A stretch of DNA of 64,000 nt, from NCBI RefSeq assembly GCF_001194135.2, contig NC_068997.1, forward strand, positions 6,066,379-6,130,378, read 5' to 3'. The translations under genes were made by a program, and so were the position numbers. Under the pieces are notes generated by a model that had not been told where the DNA came from, made no database searches, and saw only the letters and a program-made list of their open reading frames with translations. Shown here piece after piece: positions 1 through 54,968 of this stretch (its first letter is position 1; each line of letters opens with the position of its first letter). Source of the stretch: Octopus bimaculoides. Its lineage: Eukaryota.

Positions 1-225
1 CATATATGTCGTATGTATGTCAATATGCATGTATATATGTGTCTATGTATGTGTGTATGTATGTATGTATGTATGTATGTATGTGTACGAACGTGTGTAC
101 ATATATATGTTTGCATGGATGTATGTAACTTTGTATGTACGTACATATAAATATGCGCGTATGAATGTCCGAATGTATGAATGCGTGTGTTTGTGCGTGC
201 GTAAATATGTATGTATGTAACATGT
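1..225. repeat. Degenerate (TATG)n/(TG)n microsatellite
   Basis: Runs of tatg/tgtg read directly; the overlapping ORFs are low-complexity artefacts. Confidence 0.9.
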
Positions 226-999
226 AATCCATTACAACCCATTGAATGGTTAGGCTGTAGGCTGTTAAATCGACAACTCTACCAAGCCTTGGGAGGGAGG
301 TTTTCGCTTGCCACGCTGCATGATGAAAAACAAAACTTATCTAAGGGTGGATGAACTCAGTCGAGTCCATATCATCTAACAGCTGGGTGTGAGAGAGACC
401 CCCTCCTAGTCTTTGTTTAGATAGAAGTAATCTCACCTTCGACTTCGTTTGCATCCAGTGATGTAGACTGGTTCTTGATTTTGGTCAAATGAATATGTTG
501 TTCAGAAAGTGTGATTAGCCCAGTGCAAGACATTTAATCACTTTCAAAAGCTTCGGGCACATGTGCTGTTTGATTTTTAACATTTCTAGTAACATCTCTA
601 CCACGTGTTGCTTAATATTGCTGTGTCGAGAAAGGCAAAACATCCAATGAAAAAATCCATGATGGAATGACGGTGTGCGCCAGTGTGGGTGGTAACTCTT
701 TGAACTCGTATTGCAGGAGGCACTCATTGTTGCCATATTTGTGCAACAGAGTGTAGGTCCTTAGCAGGACTGAAAATTCCTATCCGTACTGCTTATGTTT
801 AAGACAAAAATCAAACAATGTTATTGTTCGAAATCGAGTTGTAGCCATCATTTACCTACCTGCCTGCCTTCCTGCCTGTTAGTCTGTTTGTCGGTCTGTC
901 TGTTTGTCTGTCTGTCTGTGCAACCATTAATCCGGGCACCTTTTTTCTCCCCGTTTTTTCCCCCTCTCTCTCTATCTGTTTTCTCTCCTCATTCCTTTC

Positions 1000-1060
1000 C
1001 TTAGAAGAGCGTAGTCTCAAAACGTCAAAGACTTCTTCCATTTTCCCTTAGTACCAAAGT
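1000..1060 (+). repeat. Degenerate copy of the hammerhead-like repeat motif also at 39270-39330
   Basis: GAAGAGCGTAGTCTCAAAACGTCAAAGACTT here vs GAAGAGCGTAGCTCGAAACGTCAAAGACTT at 39278; core degraded. Confidence 0.6.
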
Positions 1061-1129
1061 AATATACCTTGTTTGTTGTTCTCTCACCCGTCTCTCTCTT
1101 TTGATTTTTGTCTTTTGTATAGTTTTGCA

Positions 1130-1130
<1 letters not shown>

Positions 1131-1191
<61 letters not shown>

Positions 1192-1210
1192 GTCTGTCTG
1201 TCTGTCTGTC
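1131..1210. repeat. (TCTA)n-(TCTG)n compound microsatellite
   Basis: Read directly; a similar compound array lies at ~4180-4265. Confidence 0.9.
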
Positions 1211-2113
1211 TTTTTCTCCTCTCTTAAATGCATATATGTATGTGTGTGCGCGTGCGTGCAAGTGTGTATGTGTGTGTATACACACCATACACATATACAT
1301 ATATATCACACATTCTTATAAAAGCAACTGTGGCGTTTAGTAACAGAATGTCGTAAGCACCATCCTGGCCATTTTCGAAGTTAGTGTATCGTTTTCTTTG
1401 TCTCGACGTCGAGAAACCGAAAAATTTGGGAGGAAGAACCGGTGAGGCTTGCAATAAGGTCGAAAATCCGGCTGAAAAAATTGTACCTTGACGCTGTTGA
1501 CACGACGCTCGCTCACCCAAACTCGGACCAGAGAGTTTAGTAGCACATCATCGTAAGCACACTCACACACAATCAGTAACTTTGGTGTGGTCCCTGTATC
1601 ATTTTTCGAGTGTTATGGCTCATTTTCTAATATTCTTCGTTACCATCGTAACGATAATGGGCTATTACCTTACTATCTTGTCTTACTTACCTCTTAAATA
1701 TACTTACCTTGGTATATTAAAACAGAAACAATACCTTGGGTGAGGGTCTCTGTATGCTTTTTGCTAGGTATTATAGCTAAAATATGCAATGCGATACACC
1801 GTTTCATTGTACCCATTTATTCTACAAAATGAGAAAGACGCAGTCATTGTTTAATCTTTCAGATGCAAACATAAATATATAATTTTACATCGGTGAAATG
1901 GTTAGAGGAGGTCTTCACGGTCATTTTAAGACCAAAACTAGCTTCCTAACTACATTCCTTGTCGATATATCGTATTCTGAATGTCGCGAAACTTTGTCAT
2001 TTTCTCGGTTTTTAAGTTGTGGCACTTACGCGGTCTGTTACTAAACGTTTCAATTGAAAGAAAAGAAATTACAAGGATAGAACTATAAAGACAACACCAC
2101 CACCACCACCACC

Positions 2114-2144
<31 letters not shown>

Positions 2145-2172
2145 TCAACAACACCGACTAGATCATATTTAC

Positions 2173-2301
2173 ATGTTAGAAGTCCACAGTCATGTCCAGT
2201 ATAATTGTTGGAACATTCGCAGTAATTTGAAGTTGTTAAACACCTTCCATTCTTGGCACACGATACTCCCCAACGTCTACAATCAAAGTCGACTTTCTGA
2301 G
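2173..2301 (-). CDS. Internal coding exon encoding one EGF-like domain (probable secreted EGF/EGF-ZP family protein)
   Basis: Acceptor tctttctcttgtccttcttcttttgcag and donor gtaaat; 129 nt, phase 1-1; translates (x)QKVDFDCRRWGVSCAKNGRCLTTSNYCECSNNYTGHDCGLLT with six Cys and the EGF signature C-x-C-x5-G-x2-C. Confidence 0.8.
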
Positions 2302-2455
2302 CTGCAAAAGAAGAAGGACAAGAGAAAGATGATTACAACAAATGTTATTTATTTCATATGTAAAATCATTATTGTAAGACAGACAAATAGATAAATAAAC
2401 ACAAGACACGCATAATGAAATAATAACGAATGCGTAAGTGGTTGGAGGGAGAGTT

Positions 2456-2655
2456 GCTAGTCACAGTGATGGTTAGCAGGGTTAATCACAATAGTAGTGG
2501 CAGGGTGGGGCTGCTAGTTACAATGGCATTGCAAGAGGGAGATGCTAGTTTTAACGGTAACAGCAGGAATGCTAGTCACAATAGTGGTAGCAGGAAGAGA
2601 TGCTAGTCACAATGGTGGTAGCAGGAAGAGATGCTAGTTACTATGGTGGTAGAAG
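2456..2655. repeat. ~31-bp minisatellite, about 7 diverged units (consensus GCTAGTCACAATGGTGGTAGCAGGAAGAGAT)
   Basis: GCTAGT recurs at ~27-31 nt spacing; the units at 2571-2632 are nearly identical; no unique spacers. Confidence 0.8.
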
Positions 2656-4180
2656 TGAATTCGTCTCCCAAACTTTAAGACGCTTTAAAAAAATTATAAA
2701 CAGAAAAACGACAAACAAATAGGACCGCAAACAATTACATTTTAACAAGTAATGTGTGGGGGGATAAGAGAGCAGCTCTTTACTGGAGAAATTGATACAA
2801 GAAAAATAGTGGAGGAAAACGATGTGCATTTGAAAGGGAAGCTGGAGGAAGCCCTGACCGATGCGAAGCACGATGAATATTCCATCTAACTGGATAGGCC
2901 ATGTGGAAGAATATGTTTATCCTTCCGGACCGAAGGTGGGGCAAGAAGATAGACAGAGCTGGGATGTCAATACATCAACCCTCAGAGTTGTGCCATGGTA
3001 GATGGGAAGATAAGGCGAGGAGAGAAGCAAAGCTAGGGTATCTCACACACCAGCCCACAGACTTGTGCTGTAACAGATCGAAAGATAAGGCGAAGATCTA
3101 GTCGCATCGCAGTAGATGGGGAAAAATCGTGAGGAGATACTGACGTTGACTGTTGGTTGTTATTTCTACGACAGTATGGGTAGGTGGTGAGATCAGGGCT
3201 GATTGGCGATAATATATGATAAGGTGGGGGTCCGCATGAACATTTGTGTCTTAGTGAGGTTCAAAGAACACGAGGCTATTTCGAAATTGTATTGCAGGAG
3301 CAGAAACGAAGTCAATTTGACTGGCGGTATAGAGCAGAAGGCGTAGTTGCTACACATGCGGAAGTAAAAGCCACATGAGGGTTTTCTGCTTAGAAGTGGA
3401 ACAACGATGCAAAGAGGGAACAGTCTATAAGTAAAGGCAGCACAACAACAACAAACTCCAGAAGGAAGAGCAAGGCTGCTGTCATTGCTGTTTCCACAAT
3501 ATCGTTGGTCGTAGCTTTGAGGATAGCTAGAAAGGAAACGAAGAAAAGTAGAATGGCATGGTTTTCAGTGCTAGCAGCATCAGGTGCCAGGAAGTAGGGG
3601 GCCCGGAAAGGTGTAAATGGGGGAAAATCTCAAGAACTGTAAATACGTGGGGTAATATAGAAAGAATGGTCCTAATCTAAAACATACAGTTTACTGATAA
3701 TCTTCACAGAAGGGCAAAAGTACGCCTACATGGTTGTGTGGGTCAGTAATGGAATTCATGGTTGTGAGGGTGAGTAGCGAGAAATTGGTGCAGATACTGA
3801 ATGAATTGAAAAAGTGCAACAGAAAAGTTATATTCATTAAAGTCGAGATTGGCAAGGATTACACCCAGCATAAAAATTATAGACGTTTGTTGAAAACCAC
3901 ACCAGAAATTAATCAACAGCTCAAGAAAGTTACTCAGAAGATGTAGGAGATTTCAGAGTAAGGCTCAAACCGAACATAGTTAGGTTCAGAGAAGCCTATT
4001 TGTAAAAGGGAAACCAAAGCGGAAAATGGTCGGGTGCCATATGGTACCCTGATTCAACCATGCTAGCAGGTTTGGCACTTGTGCGTGTGTGGGGCGGGGT
4101 GAGTTGCCCATATTTGTTTTGTATACAAAATTTTTAACCAGTCTTGATATATTATATGACAGTTCTCCTACACTACTTGA

Positions 4181-4233
<53 letters not shown>

Positions 4234-4310
4234 GTCTGTCTATCTGTCTGTCTGTCTGTCTGTCTATGTGTGCGTATGTATGTGTGTGTGCGTGCGTGCG
4301 CGTGTATATA

Positions 4311-5598
4311 CGACGGAGTGCCCAAAAGTAACCGGAAACACTCTCTATGGAACAAGCCAGTTGTAGTTCAGACTTCCGCCGCTAGAAACCACTTGAAGTG
4401 ACTCTCAGGCATAAGTGTGCCGACCGGCATCTACTAGTGAGGTCGTACTGCTACGTGGTGTGCCATTGTTTTGTAGTGCTTCTCCCTTGTTCGTCAATTT
4501 TTGCGATGGCTGAAACGAAGGAACAACGTTCTTCCGTAAAATTTTGTTTCCTGCTGGGGAAAAAGGGCGGCCGAAACAGTTGTCATGCTTCAAATAGCTT
4601 AGAAGGACGCTGCCATGATCAAAACACAAGTTTGCGAGTGGTTTCCACGCTTAAAGAATCGTCATTTGTTGCTCGAAGACCAATCTCGTTCACGGTGACC
4701 GTCGACCTCCCGAACGAATGAAAACATCCCGAAAATTCATGAACTGATCCTGGAGGATCATCGCCGAACAATTGACGAACTTGTTGATATGATTGGTATG
4801 TCCTGGAGCTCCTCCCAACAAATTTTGCGCGAGGAATTGTGACTGAAAAGAGTTGCAGCAAAATTTGTGCCTTGCTTGCTCACAGAAGATCCAAAGCAGT
4901 CACGACTGAATGTGTGTTGTGAACTGAAAGAACAGTTGGAAGTTGATCCGGATCTTTTTTCGAAGCTGGTGCTACAATCCGGAAACGAAGCAGCAATCAA
5001 GTCAATGGAAGCATTCAATGACACTACGCCTTTAAAAAGCGCGTCAAGTGAAGCCCAATGTCAAGACGATGCTGATTTGCTTCATGGATGCGAAAGGAAT
5101 TGTCCACACAGAATTTGTTCCTCTTGGCCAAACATTTTACCTGGAAGTTCTGAAGCGTCTGCGAGACGCAGTGAGACGAAAACGCTCCAATCTGTGGTAA
5201 AGTGGATAGTAGTGGTTTCATCACGACAATGCGCTTGTGCACACCGCCTTGAGTGTGAGATAGTTATTGACCAAAAATGGCATGACCCCGTTTGCTCACC
5301 CTCTCTATTCACCCGATATTGCTCCCTGCTACTTTTTTATTCCCCTGAATGAAAAAAAGTCCTTAAAGGAAAACGTTTTGCAGATGTGGAAGAGGTGAAG
5401 AAAAAAAAAAAGACAGAGGCGTTAAAAGGTATCACTTCGCAAAAGTTCCAGCACTACTTCGAACAGTGCAAAACGCGTCTGGACTGATGCATTTCTTCAA
5501 ATGGAGAATGTTTTAAAGGTGATAAAAGTGTAAACGTGTAAAAGTAAGTAAATAAAATGATATTGCAAAATTTTGATTTCTTTTGGGCACCACCTCGT
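4311..5598 (+). mobile_element. Full-length but decayed mariner transposon
   Basis: Imperfect TIRs (ACGACGGAGTGCCCAAAAG / revcomp ACGAGGTGGTGCCCAAAAG) in TA context, ~1.29 kb; frameshifted transposase pieces MAETKEQRSSVKFCFLLGK, KRVAAKFVPCLLT, HPLYSPDIAPC, KGKRFADVEEVK. Confidence 0.9.
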
Positions 5599-6698
5599 GT
5601 ATATGTGTGTGTGTGTGTGCGTGTGTGTGTGTGATTGAATACACACGCGCGTGCATACACATTCGCGCATGTGCGCGTACGCACATATATCCAATGTTAT
5701 GTGATTCTTTCATTTATATTACACGTAATTTATGTATGCATGTCTGTGACCAAGAAAGAAAAGGTTATTATTATTACTGAGTGATCAGCACACTCCATGA
5801 AAGGGACTCGCAGGTACAAATACAAATGGCTGCCCAGCTGACAAGGGTACATCAGGAACATGCATCACAACCGCGTGTGCAACATGATGATCTCATATCA
5901 AGATAAACAGCGCATGATCTTGCAAGTGGGGCTCAGTCAGAATTTTTTTCGGATCGAATAGCCTATCCTAGGTCGTTTAAGGATGATGAACGAGACACTC
6001 ATGTTTCCAGAATTAAGAGCAGAAGTCATGAGAACCACTGCACCGTACTTCATCATCATCATCACTGGATGTTACCGAGACAAAGTTTTGCAGAGAAGTT
6101 TTCCGTCTTGTGTGCGGATTATCTTCGAACAGGGGAGGTCAGCAGCTTCCCCTTGCTGGTTTGGCATCTACAGACTAGACTAGTTTCAGGGTGTTGCCCC
6201 TTGTCAATGCAGAGCAGCCGAATCCAGCAGACGTCGCTACTGACTATCTGTAGGAAGGTTATTTATCTAATTTCAGTGGAATACATCCACTGGTTTTCAG
6301 AAATAGAGATATTAATATTTCTAAGTCTCTCTAAAGGAGACTACGGCAGCGGTACTGGATATTAATAATTATCGCCAAGCCAACATGAAACTAGTCTAGT
6401 CTGCAGATGCCAAACAAGAAGTACTGCATGTCGTTTCCAAATTTCTAGAAACATACATACATAACACCAAATATATATGCATACATACATACATACATAC
6501 ATACATAACATCAAATATATACCCATACACATACACACACACATGTATACACAAATATATATAATTGTACATCTATAATGTGTGTATAATAAATAGTTTG
6601 ATTTGGCTCTACGAAGCATAATGTTTCGCAGGCTTCTAGCAGAAACATAGCTCGTTCAAGTTCAGATTACCTAATGGAGGAATATACATCGGCACTGG

Positions 6699-6750
<52 letters not shown>

Positions 6751-6828
6751 GTATGTATGTACATACATACATACATATAGGTATTGTACACACACATATC
6801 CATACATACATACGTACATACATATATA

Positions 6829-7968
6829 TACATGGTGCAGTGAATAATTGTTGTCTAAATTACACAAAAATGAAAATAACACTGACATCTCATTTTAACA
6901 GATATATTAACCAAAATTACGTAAAAATATCTTGAAATACTAAAGAGTAAATTTATTCAATAAAACCGCCATTGGCTTCAACCACGGCCTCCAGGCGACT
7001 TTGGAATCTCCTGTAGCTCTTCTGGACGGTCTCCTTGTTTAAGTTGGTGAACGTTGCTATAATTCTTGCCTACAGTTCATCTTTGGTGTTACAAGGAGTT
7101 TTGTTGGTCTCTCGCTCAACTATGGCACACACATAATAATCAGCGGGGTTGCAGTCTGGGGAGTTAGGTAGCCTGATGTTAGGGGTGACGTGGTCACGGA
7201 AATTGTCTGATAGCCATGACTGGGGACTCCTGCTTGTGAGGCATGGTGCAGAGTCCTGTTGCCAGACATAGGGTCTTCCAGCAGCCACCCTCTTGACCCA
7301 GGGAAGCACTAATCCTTCCAGGCACACGATGTAGGCCTCCATGTCGAGTGTGAGGCTGTGAAGGAAGATGAATGGAGGCATAATGTTGCCATTAGTAGTG
7401 ATCACTCCAAACACCATGATGTTGATTGGATGTTTGATTTTTATCACTCTCGGTACATGTTTTGAGGATATGGTAAGCCAACGGTTGTTCTGTGTGTTCA
7501 CCATCTAAGCCTAGCAGACATTTTTCTCGTCTGAGAAAAACCAAAGCATGTTTGGTTGGAGGGAATGCTTGAGTTTTTTCAAAAGCTTCCTAGCGCGTTC
7601 TTTCCTCTTGTCTTTGATGGCTTGGGATAAAAAATTGGCCCTTCTTTCTCATCTTGCATGAGGAATACCGAATGTCTTCATGCACTACCTGCCTGATAAG
7701 AAACTCTCATGTCCCTGGCGATGGACCTGATTGACTTGGAGGAATTGTTGTCAATCATGGCCTGGATCTCACCAACAAATCCAGGAGTTCTTTTCTTATT
7801 AGAACAATCAGAGTGAGTTTTCCGAGTTGCCGTACCTTCGTAATAACCATTAGACTCATCCAACTGTTTCTGAATCCTTTGCATTGTCTTCAGATTGACA
7901 CCTATGTTCGTATTACAGTTTCCGGCGTGAATGCCAAGCAGTACTGCATGTCGTTTCCAAATTTCTAG
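6829..7968 (-). mobile_element. DD37D/maT-type Tc1/mariner transposon, 5'-truncated and frameshifted
   Basis: ORF 7070-7504 has VWQQDSAPC and PNSPDCNPADYYV; N-terminal HTH piece in ORF 7678-7974; terminal region near 6829. Confidence 0.85.
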
Positions 7969-8037
7969 AAACATACATACATAACATCAAATATATATGC
8001 ATACATACATACATAACATCAAATATATACCCATACA

Positions 8038-8087
<50 letters not shown>

Positions 8088-8206
8088 TGCACAAATATAT
8101 ATTATTGTACATCTATAATGTGTGTATGATAAATATACATACAAATATGTATTTATATGCATATATTAACATCCTATACATACATACATTCATACATACA
8201 TACATG

Positions 8207-9185
8207 ATAGTAACATCGATCATCAAAGCAGTTTATCATAGACCAATAGCTGGATTACTACCTCCCACTTTGAAGGGTATGTATTTGCAATCCAGGAACA
8301 GGAAATATCAACTACATATCTGATGCACAAAAGAGATAGAGATGCAGGGAAAACCATAAAATGTGACAACCGATGCAAACTTTGTGGAGTTCACACTGAA
8401 GATATGCATATCATAAGCAGTTGTCCGAAAATGTCATCACGGTATTATCTGCCGATGAGACATGATGTTATAGCTAGGACACTATATAATGAAATCCTTC
8501 GGAAGGATAGCCCCCGAAGATAAAGAAATGAGAAATCACAATATGGTGGAAGCCATAACCACTCATAATAAAAATGAGTACTGGTGGAATGTCCCAGTGA
8601 AAACCTCAATAAAATGTAAACACAACAGGCCTGATATAATGATTTGGGATAGAGAAAAGAAAGTGTGCACAGTTGAGGAAATTAGCTACCCAATGGATGT
8701 TAACATAAAGCTGAAGATCAGTAAAAAAGAGAACACCAATGCTGAACTATTGAGAAATCTGCAGTTACTCTATCCAGATTACAAGTTCAAGTTTATACTT
8801 GTAAATATTGGTACACCGAGATATGTAACACACTACCTAAATACCAATCTTGAGAAATTAGGCTTCTCAAAACCAGAAAGGAGACTGCTAATTCGAAGAC
8901 TACAGATCCAATCCGTCACTGGAACTGTAAAAATCTGTAAAACTCTCCGGAAGTTTATCATTTAAATATATACAAGCATGTTTAGATATGCAACTATATT
9001 CATGAGAATACATACATAAAACATACAAATCTTCACATGCATACATACATACAAACATAATACATACATACATACATACATGCATACAAACAAACAAAAA
9101 TATCGTGTTGTTGATGTTGAAATTCCAATGAAGGAGTTCTTTCTCTATTGGGAAGAAATCTTGAAATAAACTGAATAATGATATA
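8207..9185 (+). mobile_element. 5'-truncated R4/Dong-type non-LTR retrotransposon (restriction-like endonuclease end)
   Basis: EGYVFAIQEQEIST, CCHC knuckle CKLC..HIISSC, RHDVIA, KHNRPDIMIWD..EISYPMDVNI (PD-D/ExK nuclease); stop at 8965; 3' end GAATAATGA followed by (TACA)n. Confidence 0.85.
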
Positions 9186-9229
9186 CATACATACATACAT
9201 GCACATATACAAATTCACACACGAATATA

Positions 9230-9260
<31 letters not shown>

Positions 9261-9570
9261 TTGTTCTTTCTCGAGCCATGCCTGGCTCATAAGGGCCGGT
9301 TTCCCGGTTTCATTGGCCTATGGGTTCCCCACCTGAACGGGACGCCGGTCTGTCGCAGGTGAGCTGCTAGATGCAGGAGGAAAGAGTGAGAGAAAGTTGT
9401 TGCCAAAGAGTCAGCAGAAGTTCGCCATTACCTTCTGCTGGAGCCGCGTGGAGCCGCGTGGAGCCTAGGTGTTTCGCTCATAAACACACACGTCACCCGG
9501 TCTGAGATTCGAAGCTGCGATTCCTTGACCGCGAGTCCGCTGCTGTAACCACTAGGCCATGTGCCTCCAC
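9261..9570 (-). mobile_element. tRNA-derived SINE (family C of this window)
   Basis: Head GGAGGCACATGGCCTAGTGGTTACAGCAGCGGACTCGCGG with A/B-box-like motifs; homologous to 63003-63303. Confidence 0.8.
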
Positions 9571-10159
9571 ACATATATATAGGATCTTAGCTATCAGTCC
9601 AGTGCGCAGGTGCTCGCGGCTGGGGATGACCCAAATAATTCGAAACTGTGTCAATCGCGCGATCCTGTTATTTGCTGGAGGGTAGTAGGGGTTCGGTCCC
9701 CCTGCTAGCGATATATCATATAAAGAGGGTGCAGAGCTTTGCACTGATAACCAGCTGGCGGAGAATCTGCCTGGGGTTAAGTTAGTAGTAACATTCAACT
9801 GCCACTTTGTTGTGGGAATTCGCTTTACTGTTTATATATATATATCTGTGTGTGTATGTGTCCATAAAACATACGTACACACCTGTGTACATACAAGTGT
9901 GTTTGTATGCTTTATCCCACCTTAGAGCAATGTTGTTAATCATTCTTTTACGTCAGAAATATATTAGAATTCTTTAGATACTTACTTTTAATGTTCCCCC
10001 ACTCATCCTTCCTCCTCTTCTCCTTCTTTTCCCTTCCCACCTCCCTCGTTCTCACCTTCTTTTTCTCTTCCATTGTAACATCTAGTTTAGTCACGTAATA
10101 TTCTCAATAAGCGCGCGCACACACACATACATATGTATACCTATATCACTGTGTGTATG

Positions 10160-10278
10160 TATGTCTCTCTCTCTGTGTCTCTCTCTCTGTGTCTCTCTCT
10201 CTGTGTCTCTCTCTCTGTGTCTCTCTCTCTGTGTCTCTCTCTCTGTGTCTCTCTCTCTGTGTCTCTCTCTCTGTGTCT
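10160..10278. repeat. 14-bp tandem repeat (TCTCTCTCTGTGTC)n running into an assembly gap
   Basis: About 8 near-exact units before the N-run. Confidence 0.9.
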
Positions 10279-10774
10279 NNNNNNNNNNNNNNNNNNNNNN
10301 NNNNNNNNNNNNNNNNNNNNNNNNNNNNNNNNNNNNNNNNNNNNNNNNNNNNNNNNNNNNNNNNNNNNNNNNNNNNNNNNNNNNNNNNNNNNNNNNNNNN
10401 NNNNNNNNNNNNNNNNNNNNNNNNNNNNNNNNNNNNNNNNNNNNNNNNNNNNNNNNNNNNNNNNNNNNNNNNNNNNNNNNNNNNNNNNNNNNNNNNNNNN
10501 NNNNNNNNNNNNNNNNNNNNNNNNNNNNNNNNNNNNNNNNNNNNNNNNNNNNNNNNNNNNNNNNNNNNNNNNNNNNNNNNNNNNNNNNNNNNNNNNNNNN
10601 NNNNNNNNNNNNNNNNNNNNNNNNNNNNNNNNNNNNNNNNNNNNNNNNNNNNNNNNNNATACGTAAATACACTCATATATACATATATATGTGTGCGTGT
10701 GTGTGTGTGAATGTGTGTGTGAGTACAATGTATTTGTGTGTATATAAATATATAATAAATATTTTAGTATATAT

Positions 10775-10826
<52 letters not shown>

Positions 10827-11150
10827 AATACATACATACATGTATTCACACATATATCACGATGTGTGTGTGTGTGAATGATGAATGGAGTAATTGTTAT
10901 TACATTTATTCCATGGTTTACAGTAATTTGAATAACGTGTGTGGAGTGACAAGTTAAATATCATGTATGAAGGCATAAATGAAAACAATGGTATAGTCGT
11001 GTCCATTATATAATGCATGTTACATAATGACTATCACAGTCATTTAGTTATAACCGAATGAACGAATATAATACAATTGCAAATTGGTTATTTCACTTAT
11101 GTAGAAAAAATATCTTATATCTTATTTGTCAAAGTTTGAAAAATAAGATA

Positions 11151-11220
11151 TTATCTTAACGCTTTACGGGGAAGAGAAAGTGCCTCAACGTTTCAGACGT
11201 CACTGCTTCATCAGAAGAAA
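11151..11220 (-). ncRNA. Hammerhead-ribozyme-like motif (type I topology), probably Penelope-associated
   Basis: UCUU-CUGAUGA-agcagugacgucu-GAAA-CGUU...AGCGU-U-AAGA: core intact, stem I 4 bp, stem III 5 bp, GUU triplet; stem II weak. Confidence 0.5.
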
Positions 11221-11312
11221 GAAAGAGAGCATAGAGTGTAAAGAGAAAGAGAGATAGTCCGAGAAAGAAAACTAGCGAAGGTTAGAAACCAAGTGGGAAT
11301 GCTGTTCTATGG

Positions 11313-11346
<34 letters not shown>

Positions 11347-12189
11347 TGTATGTATGTNNNNNNNNNNATGTATGTATGTATGTATGTATGTATGTATGTA
11401 TGTATGTATGTACGTCCATGACAAAAATCGCAAACTGCAGCATACACGTGATCACAAAAACACAAATTTCGCAACTTGCGAAGTAAACACAGCGATGTCA
11501 TTGGGTACACTGCTACTTGAAGGTCTCTGCTAGCACTCACAGCGCACGCAACCGTGTACTGTCATCTGTTGGCGCGCTACAGAGCTAGTTAGGGAACTTT
11601 TTTATACCACCTTGTAGATACAAGATACAGAAGATTTTGAGTTATACAGTAGTTACTCCGAGTTTTAAAGAGACGAAAGTTCTCGAGCGATAGAAATAGA
11701 AAAGAGAAATGATGCTTAAATTCAACTTACAAAAAATGGGTGTTATTTCTAATAATATTGTAATAAAATCCCTTTGAATAACAGACAAAGTTTCGGTATT
11801 GAGAGTACTTCTTAAATAATTCTATAGATATATATGAATAAACATATACAGCACTTATCAGGAGTATCAAGTATAGGTCAGGAATATAAAAAGCCAACAA
11901 TCACTCGCGAACGAGTATATCTTGGTATCATGTATAATATATACGCTTCTATTTTATAAAAATATTGGTTATAGAGTATCAGTTTGTAAAAAAAATAAGC
12001 CGAGGAGTATCAGTCTGTAAAAAGATAAGTCAAAGATTATCGATATATGCGATATATACGAATACAGGTGAAGACGTGTCAATATATAAGAATATAGGCT
12101 AGGAGTGTCGATGTTAAGGTATATAGATCAAGGGTATCGAGGTATAAGAATATAGGTCGGGTGTATCGATATATATGAAACGAAATCAG

Positions 12190-12600
12190 GAGTAAAGAGG
12201 CTGGGCTTGCATTTGAAATTAGTGTTCGTGAGTCCTTGACCATGCTGGTGTATAAGGGTGGTGAGGTTTTTGAGAGTTTTTGTTGTTTATAGTTGGTGAT
12301 AATTTCATAGAAAGAGTTGTCGTTTAGTAAGGAGAGTGCTAGGTGTTTGTAAAAATCTGTGTCCATTAGGACTACAGTACTACATTTGTCAGCTTCTTTG
12401 ATAGTAAGGCTTTTGTCCTGTTGTAAGTATCTTAGGTTTCTCCATTCTTTGCTATTAAAGTTTGATTTGACCTTGGTTTTGGGCGGGGTAAAAGGGAAAC
12501 TCTGGATGTGGTTGCAAAAATCGTCCAGTGCTTTATTTCTTCCTTTGGAACTACTATATCGGATAGACGAGCCTCCCTTTGCGTAGAAGAGTAGCAGTCC
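12190..12600 (-). mobile_element. Penelope-like element (PLE) reverse transcriptase N-terminal fragment
   Basis: SNFNSKEWRNLRYLQQDKSLTIKEADKCSTVVLMDTDFY..L.D...Y matches the PLE 'L..D..I.IK.ADKG..VV.MD' block; continues by frameshift to NFKCKPSLF. Confidence 0.75.
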
Positions 12601-12789
12601 ATAAAGAACAAATAAATCTCCCTCAACACCGCCAAATTCCACTCAGTGGCCACATAGACTCTTGCGCCAGAAACAAAAACCCTAAATTCCTTATATTCCC
12701 TTTCTATCAATGTAAAGACCGAATCTCTACACAAGAAAGAATCAACAAGGAGAATTTTTTCATAGAGAAATTCCAACCACTTCTTAACA

Positions 12790-14088
12790 CACACTATCCA
12801 AATTTCTATATCTGTTAACAGTGCTTCTCAGGTAGACAAACTGATCAACTACACCAAGTCGTTTACCATACACATAGATATTTAGTTCCCTATACTGCTT
12901 ACCAGGGGCAGGTTGGTACATGACAACAGTTTTCTTGAGACTGACTGTCAATCCTAAGGCAGTGCAAGCATCAGAGAATGCATTCAAAATGTGTTGCATA
13001 TTAATTTCTGTGTGTGTTACTAGCTCACAATCATCTGCATACAGAAGGTTTCTTATGATAGAGGTAAATACCTTTGTTTTTACCGCAAAGCGTCTGATAT
13101 TAGATATGCTGCCAGCGGTTCGATAATGGATGTAAACACCATATCTGCAATTTCTGAACGCAATACAGAAAACCATCGCAAGATATGTGGCAAATAGGGT
13201 CGGTGCCAGAATATCACCCTGTTTCATTCCATTTTTTTATTGAGATGGGCTCCGACATTTTACCTCTAACATTAACCCTACCCTCCATGTCTTCATGAAA
13301 AGACCTAACCAAAGCAAGGAACTTTTCAGGACAACCAAGTTTCAGGAGGACTTTCCACAGTGCATTTCTATTAACGGTATCAAAAGCTTTTGTCAGATCG
13401 ACAAAAACCTGATATAACTCCAGACCCTGTTCCACACACTTCTCCTGAAGCTGTCTAGCTGAGAAGATCATATCAGTAGTGCCGCGTCCCACACGAAAGC
13501 CAGATTGACTTTCTGGAAGAACACAATCTGCAACGTGTTTCTGCAGACGATCCAAAAGTATCCTGTATGAAACCTTTCCTATGACAGAAAGCAATGATAT
13601 TCCCCTATAGTTACCACAATCATTCCTGTTGCCTTTTCCCTTATATAAGACCACGATTATTGTATCTCTCCAGTCCTCAGGTAAAGATTCACTATCCCAT
13701 ATCCTGCCAAACAAGGAGTAAAGTTGCTGTTGAAGTTTCTCACCGCCATGCTGTAACAACTCCGCATGTATACCATCCATACCCAGAGACCTCCCATTAT
13801 TCATCCTTGAGACAGACACCGCAACTTCTTCCAACATTGGTGGTTCCGTGAGAGCCGCCTTCACAGGTAACCCAGGGATGAAAGTTCATCAAAGTATTCT
13901 CGCCACCTTCGCAGAATTCCTTGTGAATCACGAAGAAGTTCTTTACCATCCCTGCTACGAAGTGGTGTCATCAGAAAAGAAGTCGGTCCATAAAACTCTC
14001 GCAAGAGACCATATAACAGCTTTGTGTTATTGGAATTCGATGCCGCCTGTATCTCATCGGCCTTCTTACTCCACCAGGTATCCCTCAT
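12790..14088 (-). mobile_element. RTE-clade LINE fragment with a nearly complete RT domain
   Basis: ESQSGFRVGRGTTDMIFSARQLQEKC, FVDLTKAFDTV, KQGDILAPTLF, YADD, FVYL; two frameshifts (A-run at ~13225 and ~13860); truncated at both ends. Confidence 0.92.
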
Positions 14089-15156
14089 TGACAGTTATTT
14101 CTTCAAAGCTATAATGGAAGTGACAAAGGAGCATATTCGGCATATTTTGCTTTATAACTTCAATAACGCAACGGAAAGTGTAAGGAATATAAATGCAGGA
14201 TATGGGGATCGGACAATAAGCGTAAGCCAGTGTCAATGGTGGTTCCAGAAATTCCGAGCCGGAAACTACAGCCTAGAAGACGAGCCTCGTCCTGGAAGAG
14301 CTGCAGAGCGCGACGAGGACGTCCTGCAAACCCTGGTGGAACAAAATCCCATCGTAACTATTGAGGAATTAGCAGAGAAGCTTGGATTTGGTCATTCAAC
14401 CATTCATCAACACCTGCGTGCAATCGGAAAAGTCAGCAAATTGGGTCAGTGGGTTCCTCACAAACTTTCCAACTCTAATCGCGTGCAGAGAGTGAATGTG
14501 TGCTCTTCTTTGCTGTTACGTCTCACGAATGAACCTTTTTTTCGACTGAATAGTGACTGGTGACCAGAAATGGGTTCTCTATAAAAATACCAGGCGCTGA
14601 AGACAGTGTATAGGGAACGGAGAAACAGCGGCACCCCAGGCTAAAGAAGGTCTTCACCCACATAAGGTTTTGTTATCTGTTTGGTGGGATATGAAAGATT
14701 TAGTTCACTTTGAACTTTTAAACCCAAACCAAACGTCAAAAAAGATCAACTGCGAGCAGCATGAGCGCAAGAAGAAAAACGCCCATCTTTGGTTTGAAGA
14801 CGAAAGATGTTTTTCCATCAAGATGATGCTCAGTTACATACAGCGAAGATGACATTCCTACCATATTCACGGGACATTGCCCCATCTGATTATCATTTAT
14901 TCCGCAGTCTTCAAAATCATTTGGACGGAAAAAATATGAATTCTGTAGACGAGGTCAGAACATTATTGGGGGAGTATTTTTCGTCACTGACAAATGAATT
15001 TTGGAAGAGGGGCCTTGCAAGTCTACCAGATAGATAGAAGAGCATTGTAGAATATGAAAAAGAGTATATTTTAGATTAAAAAAGAACTTAATTTATCATA
15101 ATTTTGAAAAATAAAATAAATATAAAAAAACGCATTATTTATAGGATGACCCAGTA
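14089..15156 (+). mobile_element. Mariner transposon lacking its 5' TIR, decayed
   Basis: MEVTKEHIRHILLY..., GQWVPHKL, LSVWWD, HQDDA, PYSRDIAPSDYHLF; 3' TIR (revcomp TACTGGGTCATCCTATAAATAATGCG) ends at ~15156. Confidence 0.9.
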
Positions 15157-15629
15157 TACATTACGCATACAAGCATGTATACATATATACATACATTCAC
15201 GCAAACGCCCAAACACACACACGATAGCACACGAGACCGGTCGCAACAGCAGGTACCTGACAGCGATGCCTGAGTCGGACTGACTAATAATTTCTTGTCA
15301 TCTTTTTTTTTTCTTGATGATTTAGGTTTAACTTAAAACTGCTTTAATCTTCTTGCTGTTAGCTTTGTTCATCTATGGGGTTAATGCGTGAAGATTTACA
15401 AGTGCATAGGGTGATGGGCAAGAATGTAGAGCACTGAGGATTATGTGTGTGTGTGTACGTGTGTGAGTTCGCGCGCGCACACACACACACTGAGTCAGAG
15501 TCTAAATAAACTTATGAAAATTAGGCTTTTATTTTATGTTGTAATTGATGTCGTCGATGGGGAAAATCCAACAAAAACAAGAATGTATAAACAGATAACC
15601 TGTATATAGTTTAGAGAAATCTAGATAGG

Positions 15630-15775
15630 TACAGGCGTGGCTGTGTGGTAAGATGGTTGCTTCCTAAATACGTGGTTCTGGTTCAGTTCCACTGCGAGGC
15701 ACCTTGACCAAGTGTCTTCTACTAAGGCTTCGGGCCGACTAAAGCCTTGTGAGTAGATAGGGTAGACGGAAACAG
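15630..15775 (+). mobile_element. tRNA-derived SINE (family B), 5' part
   Basis: GGCGTGGCTGTGTGGTAAG...GGTTCAGTTCCACTGC head; homologous to 60900-61345. Confidence 0.8.
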
Positions 15776-17143
15776 ATTCAAAATAACCTCCCCCTCGCTT
15801 CCACCTGAACTCTAACTAAAAAACAGTTCACATTAAGCCAAGCTGGTTGAAGGACCCTGAACGAAGCTGCACACTAAATTATGCCCGGTTGCATATGCAA
15901 CTGCTCATACCCTGGTCTGTGGAAACACGCGTAGGTCTCCGTAACCATAAAAATGTGGTGTATGACGTTGTAAAATAGAAGGAAATAAATTTCGAGGGTA
16001 TACCAGTCTTTCGCTTGCAACAGCCGGTTCTTTTGATCAAACTATCGTATCTCCAGCTGCTTCAAATGCTAAGATATCAAAAATTGTCAAAGTGTAGTAC
16101 AACGGTTTTGCTATGGAATGGTGAAACCATTTTTTCGTTTTCTGAAAAATCAACGTTTTGGACTTACGACATTTTTACATAACAGCAACGATATATATAT
16201 CTATATATATATATGCAGGCTAATACAAGACCCACATTAAACTCCTCACTCGTATCACGATCGAACCAAGAGTTTAACTATGGTCTGTCCTTAGCACTTA
16301 CTTAGCATTACCTGCTACTCTTTGGGTCTTCTAGATACCAATACCATTTATATATAACGTATGTATGTATGTATGTATGTATGTATGTATGTATGTATGT
16401 ATGTATGTATATGTATATATATATATATATATATATANNNNNNNNNNNNNNNNNNNNNNNNNNNNNNNNNNNNNNNNNNNNNNNNNNNNNNNNNNNNNNN
16501 NNNNNNNNNNNNNNNNNNNNNNNNNNNNNNNNNNNNNNNNNNNNNNNNNNNNNNNNNNNNNNNNNNNNNNNNNNNNNNNNNNNNNNNNNNNNNNNNNNNN
16601 NNNNNNNNNNNNNNNNNNNNNNNNNNNNNNNNNNNNNNNNNNNNNNNNNNNNNNNNNNNNNNNNNNNNNNNNNNNNNNNNNNNNNNNNNNNNNNNNNNNN
16701 NNNNNNNNNNNNNNNNNNNNNNNNNNNNNNNNNNNNNNNNNNNNNNNNNNNNNNNNNNNNNNNNNNNNNNNNNNNNNNNNNNNNNNNNNNNNNNNNNNNN
16801 NNNNNNNNNNNNNNNNNNNNNNNNNNNNNNNNNNNNNNNNNNNNNNNNNNNNNNNNNNNNNNNNNNNNNNNNNNNNNNNNNNNNNNNNNNNNNNNNNNNN
16901 NNNNNNNNNNNNNNNNNNNNNNNNNNNNNNNNNNNNNNNNNNNNNNNNNNNNNNNNNNNNNNNNNNNNNNNNNNNNNNNNNNNNNNNNNNNNNNNNNNNN
17001 NNNNNNNNNNNNNNNNNNNNNNNNNNNNNNNNNNNNNNNNNNNNNNNNNNNNNNNNNNNNNNNNNNNNNNNNNNNNNNNNNNNNNNNNNNNNNNNNNNNN
17101 NNNNNNNNNNNNNNNNNNNNNNNNNNNNNNNNNNNNNNNNNNN

Positions 17144-17206
<63 letters not shown>

Positions 17207-17542
17207 CCCATTTTCTGCGCTTAGTCGATCAATTTCAGTTTCCTAAAGACGAATTCCTTCAGTACACCCTCTACTGACCTTCATTCCCCGCGTCTATTCT
17301 ATCCTGTCTTAGAAGAAACCAATACAATAATCCATTAGAACTTAATGAGACAGACAGATTGATTCACCAGCTGACATACCAAAATAACAATAGAATCTTT
17401 AACAATGAGTGACATACCAATATTAAGTGATTCTAATACAGAAGTGAACTTTAAAATGTAAGTAATTTATAGACGGACATCATCATTGCAGTGATATCCT
17501 CTGCGTATTTAATACGCACCGCGTTAAAAAAACAGAAATTAC

Positions 17543-17594
17543 CTTGTATTTCGCCAATACAAGTCAGTATGATACAAACTTCGAAAATATATAA
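17543..17594 (-). CDS. Candidate signal-peptide exon for the EGF gene (alternative 1)
   Basis: LYIFEVCIILTCIGEIQ+G with a strong phase-1 donor AAG|gtaatt; joined to exon 2301 it reads IQA-QKVDF; acceptor weak, no ATG. Confidence 0.25.
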
Positions 17595-17615
17595 CTACCA
17601 ATATATGTACTCGAG

Positions 17616-17652
<37 letters not shown>

Positions 17653-18489
17653 CGTACATATGTGCATAGATATATATACATACATGCGTGTATGTATATA
17701 TATAAACAAATAGTGAATGAGTATATGCATATATACGTACAGGTATGTGCATACCGACATCCACCTGTATGTATAGGTGCATATCTGGGTACAGGACATT
17801 GCAAACAAACATAGACGGGAAAACACACGAGCCACATAGAGAACATTCTACTTCATCAGCTACCCACGTTTTAACACCGGCGTTTCGACGAGCTTCGGGC
17901 AGGACGCATCGTTAAAACGGCTCATACCTGTGTGTGTATGTATGTATATATAAACTTTAGGCTAATTCAAGCATGTTGGGACATATTTCAACTTCTAGAA
18001 GCAAATTCACTGCAGTTTCTATAAATGACACCTATTGAATCAGAAACTCGTGTCTATGACTGTTCCCTTGCCCCCAAACAATAAGCCTGTCCTTTTTTTT
18101 AGTGGCATATCATCTTTAGAGAATTCTTGATTCGTGAGGTTATCATCCGTTCTCATAAAGATTTGTTGTCAAATGCGATTTGGTAATTGTGACACATCTT
18201 CCAGACGGAGAGAGAATTTTAATAAATCAAGAATTACGCCGTATGCTAATTGATATACCTATATTTGTCTATGTTGTTTACGTATTGGCATCTTTTAGTT
18301 ATTTCTTTTAGCTGACTTTTGTTTAATATATATTTGTGCGTGCGCGCGTTTAAAACACATATACATATATGTATATTTATGTATGTAGATAGGTAAGTAC
18401 TATATGTTTGAATATTTATATGTGTGTGTGTGTGTGTATATGCATATCTTCTATCTATCTATCAATCTAGCAGTCTATCTGTCTGTCTG

Positions 18490-18598
18490 TCTTCTTCTTC
18501 TTCTTCTTCTTCTTCTTCTTCTTCTTCTTCTTCTTCTTCTTCTTCTTCTTCTTCTTCTTCTTCTTCTTCTTCTTTCTCTCTCTCTCTCTCTCTCTCTT
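18490..18598. repeat. (CTT)n-(CT)n microsatellite
   Basis: Read directly. Confidence 0.9.
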
Positions 18599-18603
18599 TA
18601 TAT

Positions 18604-19277
18604 ATATACTTTGGGTATGGTAGATGAGTTCAGCAAAAATTTAGATTCAGATGAATATGATACTTAAGTTGAGGCACCAGAATTTAGTACGGTATTATCC
18701 ATACAATTTCGAAGTAAGGTGATTAAAATCAAAATAAGCAACAAGGATATCCAGAGGTAACGCAGTACGATCGTATCATGCAACTCCATTTAATTGAATA
18801 ATGCATTCATTACATCAATTTAAAATGCAGAGCAATCCTCAGCTGCACAAAGACATAGAATTTAATTAAATTAGAACAGAAGGACACCTTAATATAATTA
18901 TACCTAAAATCTCTAGGAAGTTAAGGAGATAGGCAAAGAACATGTTGCCCCTACTTCAGCAGAGAAGTTACTAAATTATCAAGAAGACTCTGCCTATCAC
19001 TGATTTTATTTGTTTTTATGGGGTAAGTTTTAACTTATAGACTAGTTTATCAAATCCTTGTATATCTAAGGTTGAGAGAATAAAGGGCAGTATATGTTAG
19101 GGGTAGGGCTGAGAGAGCAGACATAAATCATTATTGGTATAGTCATAAAAACCTTTGTGCAGCTGAGGATTGCTCTGCATTTCAAATTGATGTAATGATT
19201 GCATTGTTCTATTAAATGGCGTTGCATGAAACGGTCGTACTGCATTACCTCTTGATATCCTTGTTGCATATTTTGAT
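18604..19277. mobile_element. Foldback/MITE with ~125-bp inverted arms
   Basis: 18728-18852 is the reverse complement of 19153-19277 at roughly 90% identity; the right arm runs into a gap. Confidence 0.8.
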
Positions 19278-19324
19278 ANNNNNNNNNNNNNNNNNNNNNN
19301 NNNNNNNNNNNNNNNNNNNNNNNN

Positions 19325-19560
19325 ATGGGGGCGTATGGCTTAGGGTGCTGCATTTATCATTGTAAGAGCATGGTTTCAATCCCTGAACCGGCTGATGAGT
19401 TGTGTCCTTGAGCATAACTCTTCATTTCTTGTTGCTCCAGTCCAATCAACTGGCAAAAATGAGTAATCCTGCGACGGACCGGCGTCCCATCCAGTGGGGA
19501 TTCAATATTCTACAGAATCCTGGAAACCGGCCATATGAGCCTATGGCTCGGGAACGACCT
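19325..19560 (+). mobile_element. tRNA-derived SINE related to family C
   Basis: tRNA-like head plus GGACCGGCGTCCCATCCAG core and GAAACCGGCC..ATGAGCC 3' block shared with 9261-9570 and 63003-63303. Confidence 0.7.
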
Positions 19561-19635
19561 TTGACCCTTTTTTTGACTATGTATATGTGCATAGTACTTT
19601 ATTGTCAACATTCGAAGATATCTGGTTGACAAAGA

Positions 19636-19850
19636 TGACGAGCTGGCAGAATAGTTAGCACGCCGGGCGAAATGCTTAGCGGTATTTCGTCTGTCTTTAA
19701 GTTATGAGTTCGAATTCCGCTGAAGTCGACTTTGACTTTCATCCTTCCGGGATCGATAAATTAAGTACCAGTTGCGTACTGAGGTCAAGCTAATCGATTG
19801 GCCCCCTATCCCAAAATTTCGGACCTTGTGCTTAGAGTAGAAAAGGATAT
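19636..19850 (+). mobile_element. SINE family A
   Basis: GAGCTGGCAGAATAGTTAGC...GAGTTCGAATTCCGC...AGTAGAAAAGGA; many copies in the window. Confidence 0.85.
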
Positions 19851-20344: not shown

Positions 20345-20510
20345 ACCAGATAACGAAATAAGAGAATAACGGGAAAACAGAACAACGGGATAACGGAAAA
20401 ATGGAATAACGGAACAACAGAACAACAAAATTACAAAATAACAGAATTACCAAATAACTAAATGAATTAAAGGACTAAAGAATTAAAGACATTAAAGAAT
20501 GAAACCAAAT
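20345..20510. repeat. Degenerate ~8-bp tandem repeat (GAATAACG-like grading into GAATTAAA)
   Basis: aataacgg/aacaacag/aattaaag units recur at ~8 nt period. Confidence 0.6.
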
Positions 20511-47950: not shown

Positions 47951-47991
<41 letters not shown>

Positions 47992-54841: not shown

Positions 54842-54908
<67 letters not shown>

Positions 54909-54918
54909 NNNNNNNNNN

Positions 54919-54968
<50 letters not shown>

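What the first reader, a model, noticed from the sequence alone, without database searches (positions are those of the whole stretch)
2173..2301. Hidden gene: EGF-domain exon resembling molluscan shell-matrix EGF(-ZP) proteins
Seen: a clean 129-nt phase 1-1 exon with a strong polypyrimidine acceptor, invisible in the ORF track, encoding FDCRRWGVSCAKNGRCLTTSNYCECSNNYTGHDCGLLT. Known: symmetric phase-1 exons are typical of EGF modules, and molluscan EGF-like/EGF-ZP shell-matrix proteins begin with signal peptide + (Y/F)DC...C-x-C...G-x-DC. Inference: this is the first EGF of such a protein, which would be notable in a nearly shell-less octopod. It would make most of 2.3-20 kb or more intronic.
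Basis: partly seen in the sequence, partly recalled or inferred. Interest (0 to 1): 0.7.

Follow-up and report, generated by a model that had tools for sequence, protein, structure and literature searches.

The report
Octopus EGF-ZP gene, first EGF exon

Summary
Observation confirmed and interpretation supported, but the gene is already known.

- **The exon.** Window 2301..2173 (minus strand) is a 129-nt phase 1-1 exon with a polypyrimidine-AG acceptor and a GTAAAT donor. It encodes a six-cysteine EGF module.
- **The source.** The window is 100% identical to Octopus bimaculoides CM046617.1.
- **The gene.** An upstream exon at 20586..20535 encodes MYLLEYIQPLLMMTLIY. [quoted passage not shown] That protein has a signal-type N-terminus, two EGFs, a ZP module, an RKRR furin-type site and a transmembrane segment.
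- **The rest of the gene.** Intron 1 is 18,233 nt.
- **Support for the exon.** Sepia esculenta larval cDNA contigs join the two exons at exactly these junctions. The Argonauta hians orthologue has identical exon boundaries. Substitutions are mostly synonymous.
- **Prior knowledge.** Published work names this gene's products (XP_014769935.1) as the octopus EGF-ZP shell-matrix homologue. A Nautilus shell-matrix protein has this gene as its best hit.
- **What was "hidden".** Only the 2015 UniProt model A0A0L8HS11 lacks exons 1-2.
- **Open.** The function in octopus is untested.

The parts
2173..2301 (-). [quoted passage not shown]
   Evidence: 100% match to P0138; Sepia cDNA junctions fall exactly at both ends; Argonauta orthologous exon has the same boundaries
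20535..20586 (-). Coding part of exon 1 (52 nt): ATG at 20586, MYLLEYIQPLLMMTLIY plus the first base of Ser18; donor T|GTAAGT; presumed signal peptide
   Evidence: tblastn 17/17 identity to P0121 and P0138; sequence read; T + CT of exon 2 gives TCT = Ser18; exact spliced translation reproduced
20587..20827 (-). 5' UTR / proximal promoter region conserved with the Argonauta locus. The part up to 20675 also aligns to the 5' UTR of the Sepia cDNA
   Evidence: blastn window 20528-20827 vs L001 10059-9765, 71.6% over 313 nt; L003 cDNA 340-470 vs window 20675-20545, 75%. The transcription start was not determined
2302..20534 (-). Intron 1 (18,233 nt), filled with microsatellites, assembly gaps, LINE reverse-transcriptase and mariner fragments. 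The orthologous intron in Argonauta hians is 5,682 nt
1..2172 (-). First 2,172 nt of intron 2. The next exon, an alternative 48-nt micro-exon, lies 5.7 kb beyond the left edge of the window
   Evidence: No further P0138/P0121 exon found in the window; exon map in L002

Best explanation
[quoted passage not shown] This is the cephalopod member of the molluscan EGFZP family. Exon 1 (20586..20535) supplies the start codon and a short hydrophobic leader. An 18.2-kb intron is removed, and the flagged exon adds the first EGF module. Nine more coding exons to the left of the window add an optional 16-residue linker, EGF2, a ZP module (ZP-N plus ZP-C), an RKRR furin-type site, one transmembrane helix and a short tail. 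Inferred mechanism, by analogy with other EGFZP and ZP proteins: it is a type I membrane protein on the apical face of a secretory epithelium. Its ZP module polymerises or binds other matrix proteins, and it can be shed by furin-type cleavage. The two N-terminal EGFs project outwards as disulfide-locked interaction modules. What is shown here: exon structure, identity with the annotated protein, domain content, conservation and purifying selection, and transcription and splicing of the orthologue in cuttlefish larvae. What is inferred: signal-peptide cleavage, membrane topology, furin shedding, matrix-scaffold role, and any link to the octopus stylet or another tissue.
For: The window is 100% identical to O. 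bimaculoides CM046617.1 over every non-gap block. P0138 (XP_014769934.1) is reproduced exactly by 11 exons with canonical AG/GT sites, and the first two are the window exons. An exhaustive HMMER search with the 42-aa peptide gave the A. hians orthologue at E=7.4e-20, aligned to residues 19-59 of the protein, right after the leader. Pfam on P0138 gives EGF_2 at 25.8 bits (cutoff 22.1) and VERL_C (ZP-C type) at 30.8 bits (cutoff 27.2). CUT_N (ZP-N type) scores 27.5 bits on the isolated region (cutoff 27). GRKRRD, 10 ZP-region cysteines and the TM segment are invariant or nearly so across Octopus, Argonauta and Sepia. In Sepia esculenta larval RNA-seq contigs, position 480|481 corresponds to window 20535|2301, and 609|610 runs from the exon 2 end into EGF2 (species). 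Against Argonauta there are 13 synonymous and 3 non-synonymous codon changes, with 13 of 18 differences at third positions. Literature: the EGFZP definition and a ZP pull-down of 8 shell-matrix proteins in Pinctada (PMC9290575); Nautilus shell-matrix contig_605 has this octopus gene as best hit at 2e-107; XP_014769935.1 is named as octopus EGF-ZP.
Against: No O. bimaculoides RNA reads were examined, so splicing in this species rests on the RefSeq models and on cross-species cDNA. The leader is short and was not scored with a signal-peptide predictor. The AlphaFold model was unusable (mean pLDDT 33), so the ZP fold rests on two Pfam hits close to their cutoffs. No non-cephalopod homologue passed E<=1e-3 in the indexed search, so homology to gastropod and bivalve EGFZP rests on published phylogeny, not on a test here. 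Nothing is known about function or tissue in octopus. The protein was absent from the argonaut eggcase matrix.
Confidence: 0.95

Rival explanations
1. The exon is a chance or decayed EGF-like open frame: a pseudo-exon, or a relic of a shell gene degenerating in a shell-less animal.
For: It is not listed as an ORF. It is surrounded by repeats and gaps. Octopods lack an external shell. The 2015 UniProt model omits it.
Against: The strict EGF pattern occurred in 0 of 200 simulated windows. All 11 exons are intact with canonical splice sites. The exon shows 13 synonymous versus 3 non-synonymous codon changes against Argonauta, and all six cysteines are conserved in four octopod species and a cuttlefish. 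The orthologue is spliced and expressed in Sepia.
Confidence: 0.01
2. The exon belongs to a different EGF-repeat protein (teneurin/tenascin, Notch/Delta type, or a soluble EGF-receptor ligand), not to an EGF-ZP protein.
For: The best Pfam model for the isolated exon is EGF_Teneurin. The best PDB sequence matches are Notch1 EGF repeats.
Against: These are generic EGF-fold matches at E about 1e-3 to 1e-5. The full protein has only two EGFs followed by a ZP module and a TM segment, and the window exons equal its residues 1-60. The C3-C4 loop is 7 residues, shorter than the 10-13 typical of ErbB ligands (general knowledge).
Confidence: 0.01
3. The gene is a true EGFZP orthologue, but in octopods it no longer has a biomineral role. 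Instead it acts as a general apical extracellular-matrix ZP protein of epithelia or embryos.
For: The protein is absent from the argonaut eggcase matrix although transcribed. It is strongly conserved in shell-less Octopus species. ZP proteins in general build non-mineral apical matrices (general knowledge; PMC9290575 discussion).
Against: The Nautilus orthologue is a proven shell-matrix component. The cuttlefish orthologue is expressed in larvae that are building a cuttlebone, though those were whole-animal libraries. Octopods keep chitinous stylets made by a shell-sac epithelium (general knowledge). No octopus tissue data were examined.
Confidence: 0.45

Closest known systems
[quoted passage not shown]
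   Same: Identical. Window exons 1 and 2 translate to residues 1-60 of XP_014769934.1, and the window DNA is 100% identical to the encoding chromosome record.
   Different: Nothing differs. The finding is this gene. Only the older UniProt model A0A0L8HS11 (449 aa) lacks these two exons.
Nautilus pompilius shell-matrix EGF-ZP protein (contig_605; Setiamarga et al. 2021, PMC8700984)
   Same: Its best database hit is this octopus gene (E=2e-107). The paper reports the same signal peptide, EGF and ZP organisation.
   Different: The Nautilus protein was found by proteomics inside a mineralised shell. No such evidence exists for the octopus protein. The sequences were not compared here.
Molluscan EGFZP family: Lottia gigantea LUSP-17 and Pinctada fucata PfuEGFZP (Shimizu et al. 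2022, PMC9290575)
   Same: Signal peptide, two tandem EGFs, one ZP domain, an RKRR/RRRR furin-type site and a C-terminal TM domain. The signal peptide and each EGF sit on their own exons. Cephalopod sequences (Obi, Ovu) are placed with EGFZP in the published tree.
   Different: The flanking genes differ: PEPCK and FBPase here, other genes in oysters and scallops. No tandem EGFL/EGFZP paralogues were seen in the 66-kb octopus locus. Sequence similarity outside cephalopods was too low for the indexed search.
Pteriomorph bivalve EGFL proteins (Gigasin-2, Pinctada EGFL1/2, 'EGF-like domain-containing protein 1/2')
   Same: N-terminal signal peptide plus two EGFs. These proteins are probably the source of the RefSeq product name.
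   Different: EGFL proteins have lost the TM domain and have only a degenerate ZP-like region. The octopus protein keeps both, so it is of the ancestral EGFZP type, not EGFL.
Vertebrate EGF-plus-ZP proteins such as uromodulin
   Same: EGF modules N-terminal to a ZP module, a furin-type cleavage site, a membrane anchor, and polymerisation after shedding (general knowledge).
   Different: Sequence similarity to PDB uromodulin was found only in the EGF part. The domain combination arose independently many times (PMC9290575).

Membership tests
Molluscan EGFZP (EGF-like and ZP domain-containing shell-matrix protein family, as defined in PMC9290575) | N-terminal signal peptide | tested here: inconclusive
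   Exon 1 encodes MYLLEYIQPLLMMTLIY, followed by S|QKVD. It is hydrophobic and conserved in Octopus, Argonauta and Sepia. No signal-peptide predictor was available, and the n-region has no basic residue.
Molluscan EGFZP | Two tandem EGF-like domains directly after the leader | tested here: met
   EGF1 (the flagged exon): six Cys, EGF_Teneurin 24.9 bits against a cutoff of 24.3. EGF2 (residues 85-116 of P0138): EGF_2 25.8 bits against 22.1.
Molluscan EGFZP | One ZP module with conserved cysteines, C-terminal to the EGFs | tested here: met
   VERL_C (ZP-C type) 30.8-32.4 bits against a cutoff of 27.2. CUT_N (ZP-N type) 26.1 bits in the full protein and 27.5 bits on the isolated region, against a cutoff of 27. 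Ten cysteines at 125-374 are invariant in alignment A1. Structural confirmation failed (pLDDT 33), and PDB sequence search hit only the EGF parts.
Molluscan EGFZP | Furin-type site (RKRR/RRRR) between the ZP module and the TM domain | tested here: met
   G382-R-K-R-R-D387 is invariant in all 10 cephalopod sequences. Actual cleavage was not tested.
Molluscan EGFZP | Single C-terminal transmembrane domain | tested here: met
   FITMITCLGAVVLVLLILCGVLIYLV is followed by RRKR. It is the only confident helix in the AF2 model (residues 431-467, pLDDT up to 72).
Molluscan EGFZP | Signal peptide, EGF1 and EGF2 each encoded by a separate exon | tested here: met
   Exons of 52, 129 and 132 nt, with an optional 48-nt exon between the EGF exons. 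Exons 2-4 are all phase 1-1. The Argonauta locus has the same layout. The comparison with P. fucata comes from the text of PMC9290575.
Molluscan EGFZP | Phylogenetic placement with proven shell-matrix EGFZP (LUSP-17, PfuEGFZP, Nautilus protein) | not testable with these tools
   No gastropod, bivalve or Nautilus sequence could be retrieved (one search returned cephalopods only; supplements not held). This rests on literature.
Shell-matrix protein in the strict sense (present in a biomineral matrix) | Protein detected in a mineralised or chitinous skeletal structure of this species, or expressed in its forming epithelium | not testable with these tools
   No octopus proteome or tissue expression data are available here. 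The protein was absent from the argonaut eggcase matrix.
Teneurin / tenascin-type EGF-repeat proteins (best Pfam label for the isolated exon) | Array of many EGF repeats with the teneurin or tenascin core domains | tested here: not met
   The protein has only two EGFs. EGF_TEN scores 16-19 bits against a cutoff of 65. The rest of the protein is a ZP module plus a TM segment.

The most novel reading that the evidence does not exclude
The octopus EGFZP gene is kept under strong purifying selection for a role that does not need a calcified shell, for example building the chitinous stylet or another apical matrix. The 48-nt alternative micro-exon between the two EGFs, conserved from Octopus to Sepia, would then tune that role. 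If so, the ancestral job of this 'shell-matrix' family would be matrix scaffolding in general, not mineral control.
Probability: 0.4. Interest if true: 0.35.

Novelty: already known. Interest (0 to 1): 0.12.

Why it matters
The result shows that reading sequence alone can recover a short, isolated eukaryotic exon and assign it to the right family. The biology is not new: the gene is in RefSeq and has been discussed as the octopus EGF-ZP homologue. The practical residue is small. The UniProt entry A0A0L8HS11 has a wrong N-terminus, missing the leader and EGF1. The function of a conserved, intact shell-matrix-type gene in shell-less octopods also remains an open but already recognised question.

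Tried and rejected
1. **Indexed homologue search with the 42-aa peptide.** It found nothing. A control with the last PEPCK exon gave at best 72% identity. I first took this to mean the database lacked cephalopods. That was wrong: the exhaustive search and a later indexed search returned the Argonauta and Octopus proteins. Searches were false negatives of the word index or its candidate cap.
2. **Pfam scan of whole translated frames.** The plan to paste about 17,500 residues of filtered minus-strand ORFs became unnecessary and was dropped.
3. **Ab initio scan for a phase-1 signal-peptide exon.** Its top candidate was 18789..18705, MELHDTIVLRYLWISLLLILILITLLRN. This was superseded by the true exon 1 at 20586..20535.
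4. **AlphaFold2 on the 10-sequence alignment.** It gave mean pLDDT 33, so no fold search was run.
5. **PDB profile search.** It matched only EGF domains.
6. **Supplements of PMC9290575.** They are not held, so the accession used for 'Obi' in that tree could not be checked.
7. **Literature search for octopus expression of this gene.** It returned only the Nautilus paper.

Full report
**1. The observation.**
The feature lies on the minus strand. Reading the reverse complement gives a 22-nt pyrimidine-rich tract ending in ttttgcag. The exon follows at window 2301 to 2173 (129 nt), and then the donor gtaaat. In the phase-1 frame the exon encodes QKVDFDCRRWGVSCAKNGRCLTTSNYCECSNNYTGHDCGLLT.

The six cysteines are spaced C-x6-C-x5-C-x7-C-x-C-x8-C. 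The isolated peptide passes the Pfam gathering score for EGF_Teneurin (24.9 bits against 24.3, E=2.1e-5). Its best PDB sequence matches are Notch1 EGF repeats.

The exon is absent from the start-codon-based ORF list. Its 87-aa stop-to-stop frame, 2072..2332, has no ATG, GTG or TTG.

Chance does not explain it. In 200 first-order Markov simulations of the window, a loose EGF cysteine pattern appeared 0.125 times per window and a stricter one never appeared. The only other matches in the real window (26381-26449 and 20898-21017) are translated microsatellites.

**2. Finding the gene.**
The indexed homologue search with the peptide returned nothing. This later proved to be a false negative. The exhaustive HMMER search of 1.84 billion representatives returned one outstanding hit. 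It is P0121, 473 aa, E=7.4e-20, with the query aligned to residues 19-59. [quoted passage not shown]

tblastn of P0121 against the window found two matches. Residues 1-17 (MYLLEYIQPLLMMTLIY) lie at 20586..20536 with 17/17 identity. Residues 18-60 lie on the flagged exon with 39/43 identity. Nothing else in the window matched.

The sequence at 20.5 kb shows an ATG at 20586 and 17 codons. One extra T follows, and then a consensus GTAAGT donor. That T plus the CT that opens the flagged exon makes TCT, which is Ser18. Intron 1 is 2302..20534, or 18,233 nt.

**3. Source and annotation status.**
Searching with P0121 returned P0138. [quoted passage not shown] Its cluster holds further isoforms from O. 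bimaculoides, O. sinensis and O. vulgaris.

The first 60 residues of P0138 equal the conceptual splice of the two window exons. Its genomic locus is L002, from GCA_001194135.2 CM046617.1. L002 is 100% identical to the window over every block between assembly gaps, from window 1 to 30288, in reverse orientation. So the window is O. bimaculoides.

I reconstructed the full model in L002. Eleven coding exons of 52, 129, 48, 132, 206, 149, 143, 82, 172, 151 and 209 nt, all with AG/GT boundaries, translate exactly to P0138. Only the first two exons are inside the window. The third, a 48-nt micro-exon, lies 5.7 kb beyond the left edge. EGF2 lies 13.5 kb beyond it, and the ZP and TM exons lie further still.

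The gene is therefore not hidden in current annotation. The one exception is the 2015 UniProt model A0A0L8HS11 (P0146, 449 aa). It lacks exons 1 and 2 and starts with a spurious MLF...KKKKRK segment just before the micro-exon.

**4. Evidence that the exon is used and constrained.**
The Argonauta locus (L001) has the same exon: acatccag|CC...CAT|gtaaatatgg, 129 nt, phase 1-1. Nucleotide alignment between the two species covers window 2164-2304 at 86.5% and stops within 3-9 nt of the splice sites. The rest of the intron does not align. Intron 1 is 5,682 nt in Argonauta against 18,233 nt here.

Within the exon there are 13 synonymous and 3 non-synonymous codon changes. Thirteen of the 18 in-frame differences fall at third codon positions.

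A second cluster (P0139/P0148) comes from Logan assemblies of 90 sequencing runs, with contigs of 2.3-3.2 kb carrying an uninterrupted 460- or 476-aa ORF. The run accessions are whole-larva RNA-seq libraries of the cuttlefish Sepia esculenta.

In these cDNAs, position 480|481 corresponds exactly to window 20535|2301. Position 609|610 runs from the last base of the flagged exon into the EGF2 exon. Both isoforms, with and without the micro-exon, occur in Sepia as in Octopus. Splicing in O. bimaculoides itself was not checked with reads.

**5. What the protein is.**
Pfam hits on P0138:
- EGF_2 on EGF2: 25.8 bits, cutoff 22.1.
- VERL_C, a ZP-C type model, on residues 197-374: 30.8 bits, cutoff 27.2.
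- CUT_N, a ZP-N type model, on residues 122-220: 26.1 bits in the full protein and 27.5 bits on the isolated region, cutoff 27.

The alignment of ten cephalopod sequences is 92% identical on average. It shows ten invariant cysteines in the ZP region, an invariant GRKRRD motif, and a hydrophobic segment followed by RRKR.

An AlphaFold2 run on this shallow alignment failed (mean pLDDT 33). Only the transmembrane helix was confident, so no fold search was made. A PDB profile search matched only EGF domains.

The architecture is leader, EGF, EGF, ZP, RKRR, TM. This is exactly the definition of EGFZP in Shimizu et al. 2022 (PMC9290575). That paper also reports that the signal peptide and the two EGFs occupy separate conserved exons, and that cephalopod sequences belong to the family.

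**6. Comparison with the literature.**
- Setiamarga et al. 2021 (PMC8700984) list, among 47 proteomically identified Nautilus shell-matrix proteins, contig_605. [quoted passage not shown] They call EGF-ZP one of the proteins conserved among marine conchiferans.
- The argonaut eggcase preprint (10.1101/2021.07.10.451900) states that EGF-ZP is present in octopus genomes, [quoted passage not shown]. Both accessions are in the P0138 cluster. It also states that the protein is absent from the eggcase matrix.
- The argonaut genome paper notes that shell-matrix genes are retained in O. bimaculoides despite shell loss (PMC9635652).

**7. Mechanism.**
Shown here:
- gene structure;
- domain content;
- conservation and purifying selection;
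- transcription and splicing of the orthologue.

Inferred from the family, and from general knowledge of ZP proteins:
- The leader directs secretion.
- The protein sits as a type I membrane protein on the apical side of a secretory epithelium.
- The ZP module polymerises or binds other matrix proteins. The Pinctada ZP domain pulled down eight shell-matrix proteins.
- Furin-type cleavage at RKRR can release the ectodomain.
- The flagged exon supplies the outermost EGF module.

Whether the octopus protein serves the stylet, another apical matrix or both is unknown. I rate a non-mineral role at roughly 0.4-0.45.

**8. Verdict.**
The finding is an annotated, published gene, so novelty is "already known" and interest is low.

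Noticed in passing
window 46237-62937, minus strand: Seven coding exons of a GTP-dependent phosphoenolpyruvate carboxykinase gene, at about 62.7-62.9, 61.5-61.75, 60.07-60.2, 57.25-57.45, 55.5-55.65, 47.0-47.1 and 46.24-46.6 kb (last exon). It is the upstream neighbour of the EGFZP gene on the same strand, and its 5' end runs off the right edge of the window.
   Followed up: partly
L002 58619-66050 and L001 32640-40866 (outside the window, to its left): The downstream neighbour of EGFZP is a fructose-1,6-bisphosphatase gene on the opposite strand, in both O. bimaculoides and Argonauta hians. In Octopus the EGFZP gene therefore sits between two gluconeogenic enzyme genes, PEPCK and FBPase. This is probably a coincidence of synteny.
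   Followed up: no
P0146 = UniProt A0A0L8HS11, compared with window exons 20586-20535 and 2301-2173: The 2015 O. bimaculoides gene model (449 aa) lacks the leader and EGF1 exons. It begins with a spurious MLF...TCKKKKRKIVVVIFSDV segment upstream of the micro-exon. That database entry has a wrong N-terminus.
   Followed up: yes
L002 36307-36354 (5.7 kb left of the window): A 48-nt phase 1-1 alternative micro-exon (FSAHEPHMLMSEKSWS) lies between the two EGF exons. It is present or absent in isoforms of O. bimaculoides, O. sinensis and Sepia esculenta, with a further one-residue variant (YV versus F) at its acceptor. The alternative splicing is conserved between octopods and a cuttlefish.
   Followed up: partly
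window 2302-20534 (intron 1): The intron is 3.2 times longer than in Argonauta (18.2 versus 5.7 kb). It is packed with transposon remains: LINE reverse-transcriptase ORFs at 12.0-13.9 kb (minus), mariner-type transposase fragments at 14.0-15.0 kb (plus) and 7.07-7.5 kb (minus), and many (TATG/CATA)-type microsatellites.
   Followed up: no
window 2095-2129 and 2569-2652: A perfect (CAC)n microsatellite of 11.7 copies starts 44 nt downstream of the exon's donor. A 31-nt tandem repeat of 2.7 copies lies about 270 nt upstream of the acceptor.
   Followed up: no
window 42469-42581, 38861-38955, 60972-61060, 15678-15776, 22418-22460; L001 36882-36978, 29429-29541, 7583-7678: A repeat of roughly 100 nt occurs several times in the window and several times in the Argonauta locus, at 76-93% identity. 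It looks like a SINE-type element shared by octopods.
   Followed up: no
window, 16 runs of N (for example 10279-10658, 16438-17143, 27027-27488, 53561-54299): The assembly gaps are identical to those in CM046617.1. Sequence inside intron 1 and inside the PEPCK gene is incomplete.
   Followed up: no
tool behaviour: The word-indexed homologue search missed exact or near-exact octopus proteins that are in its collection: the EGFZP exon and, apparently, octopus PEPCK. Its negative results for short or very widely conserved queries should not be trusted.
   Followed up: partly
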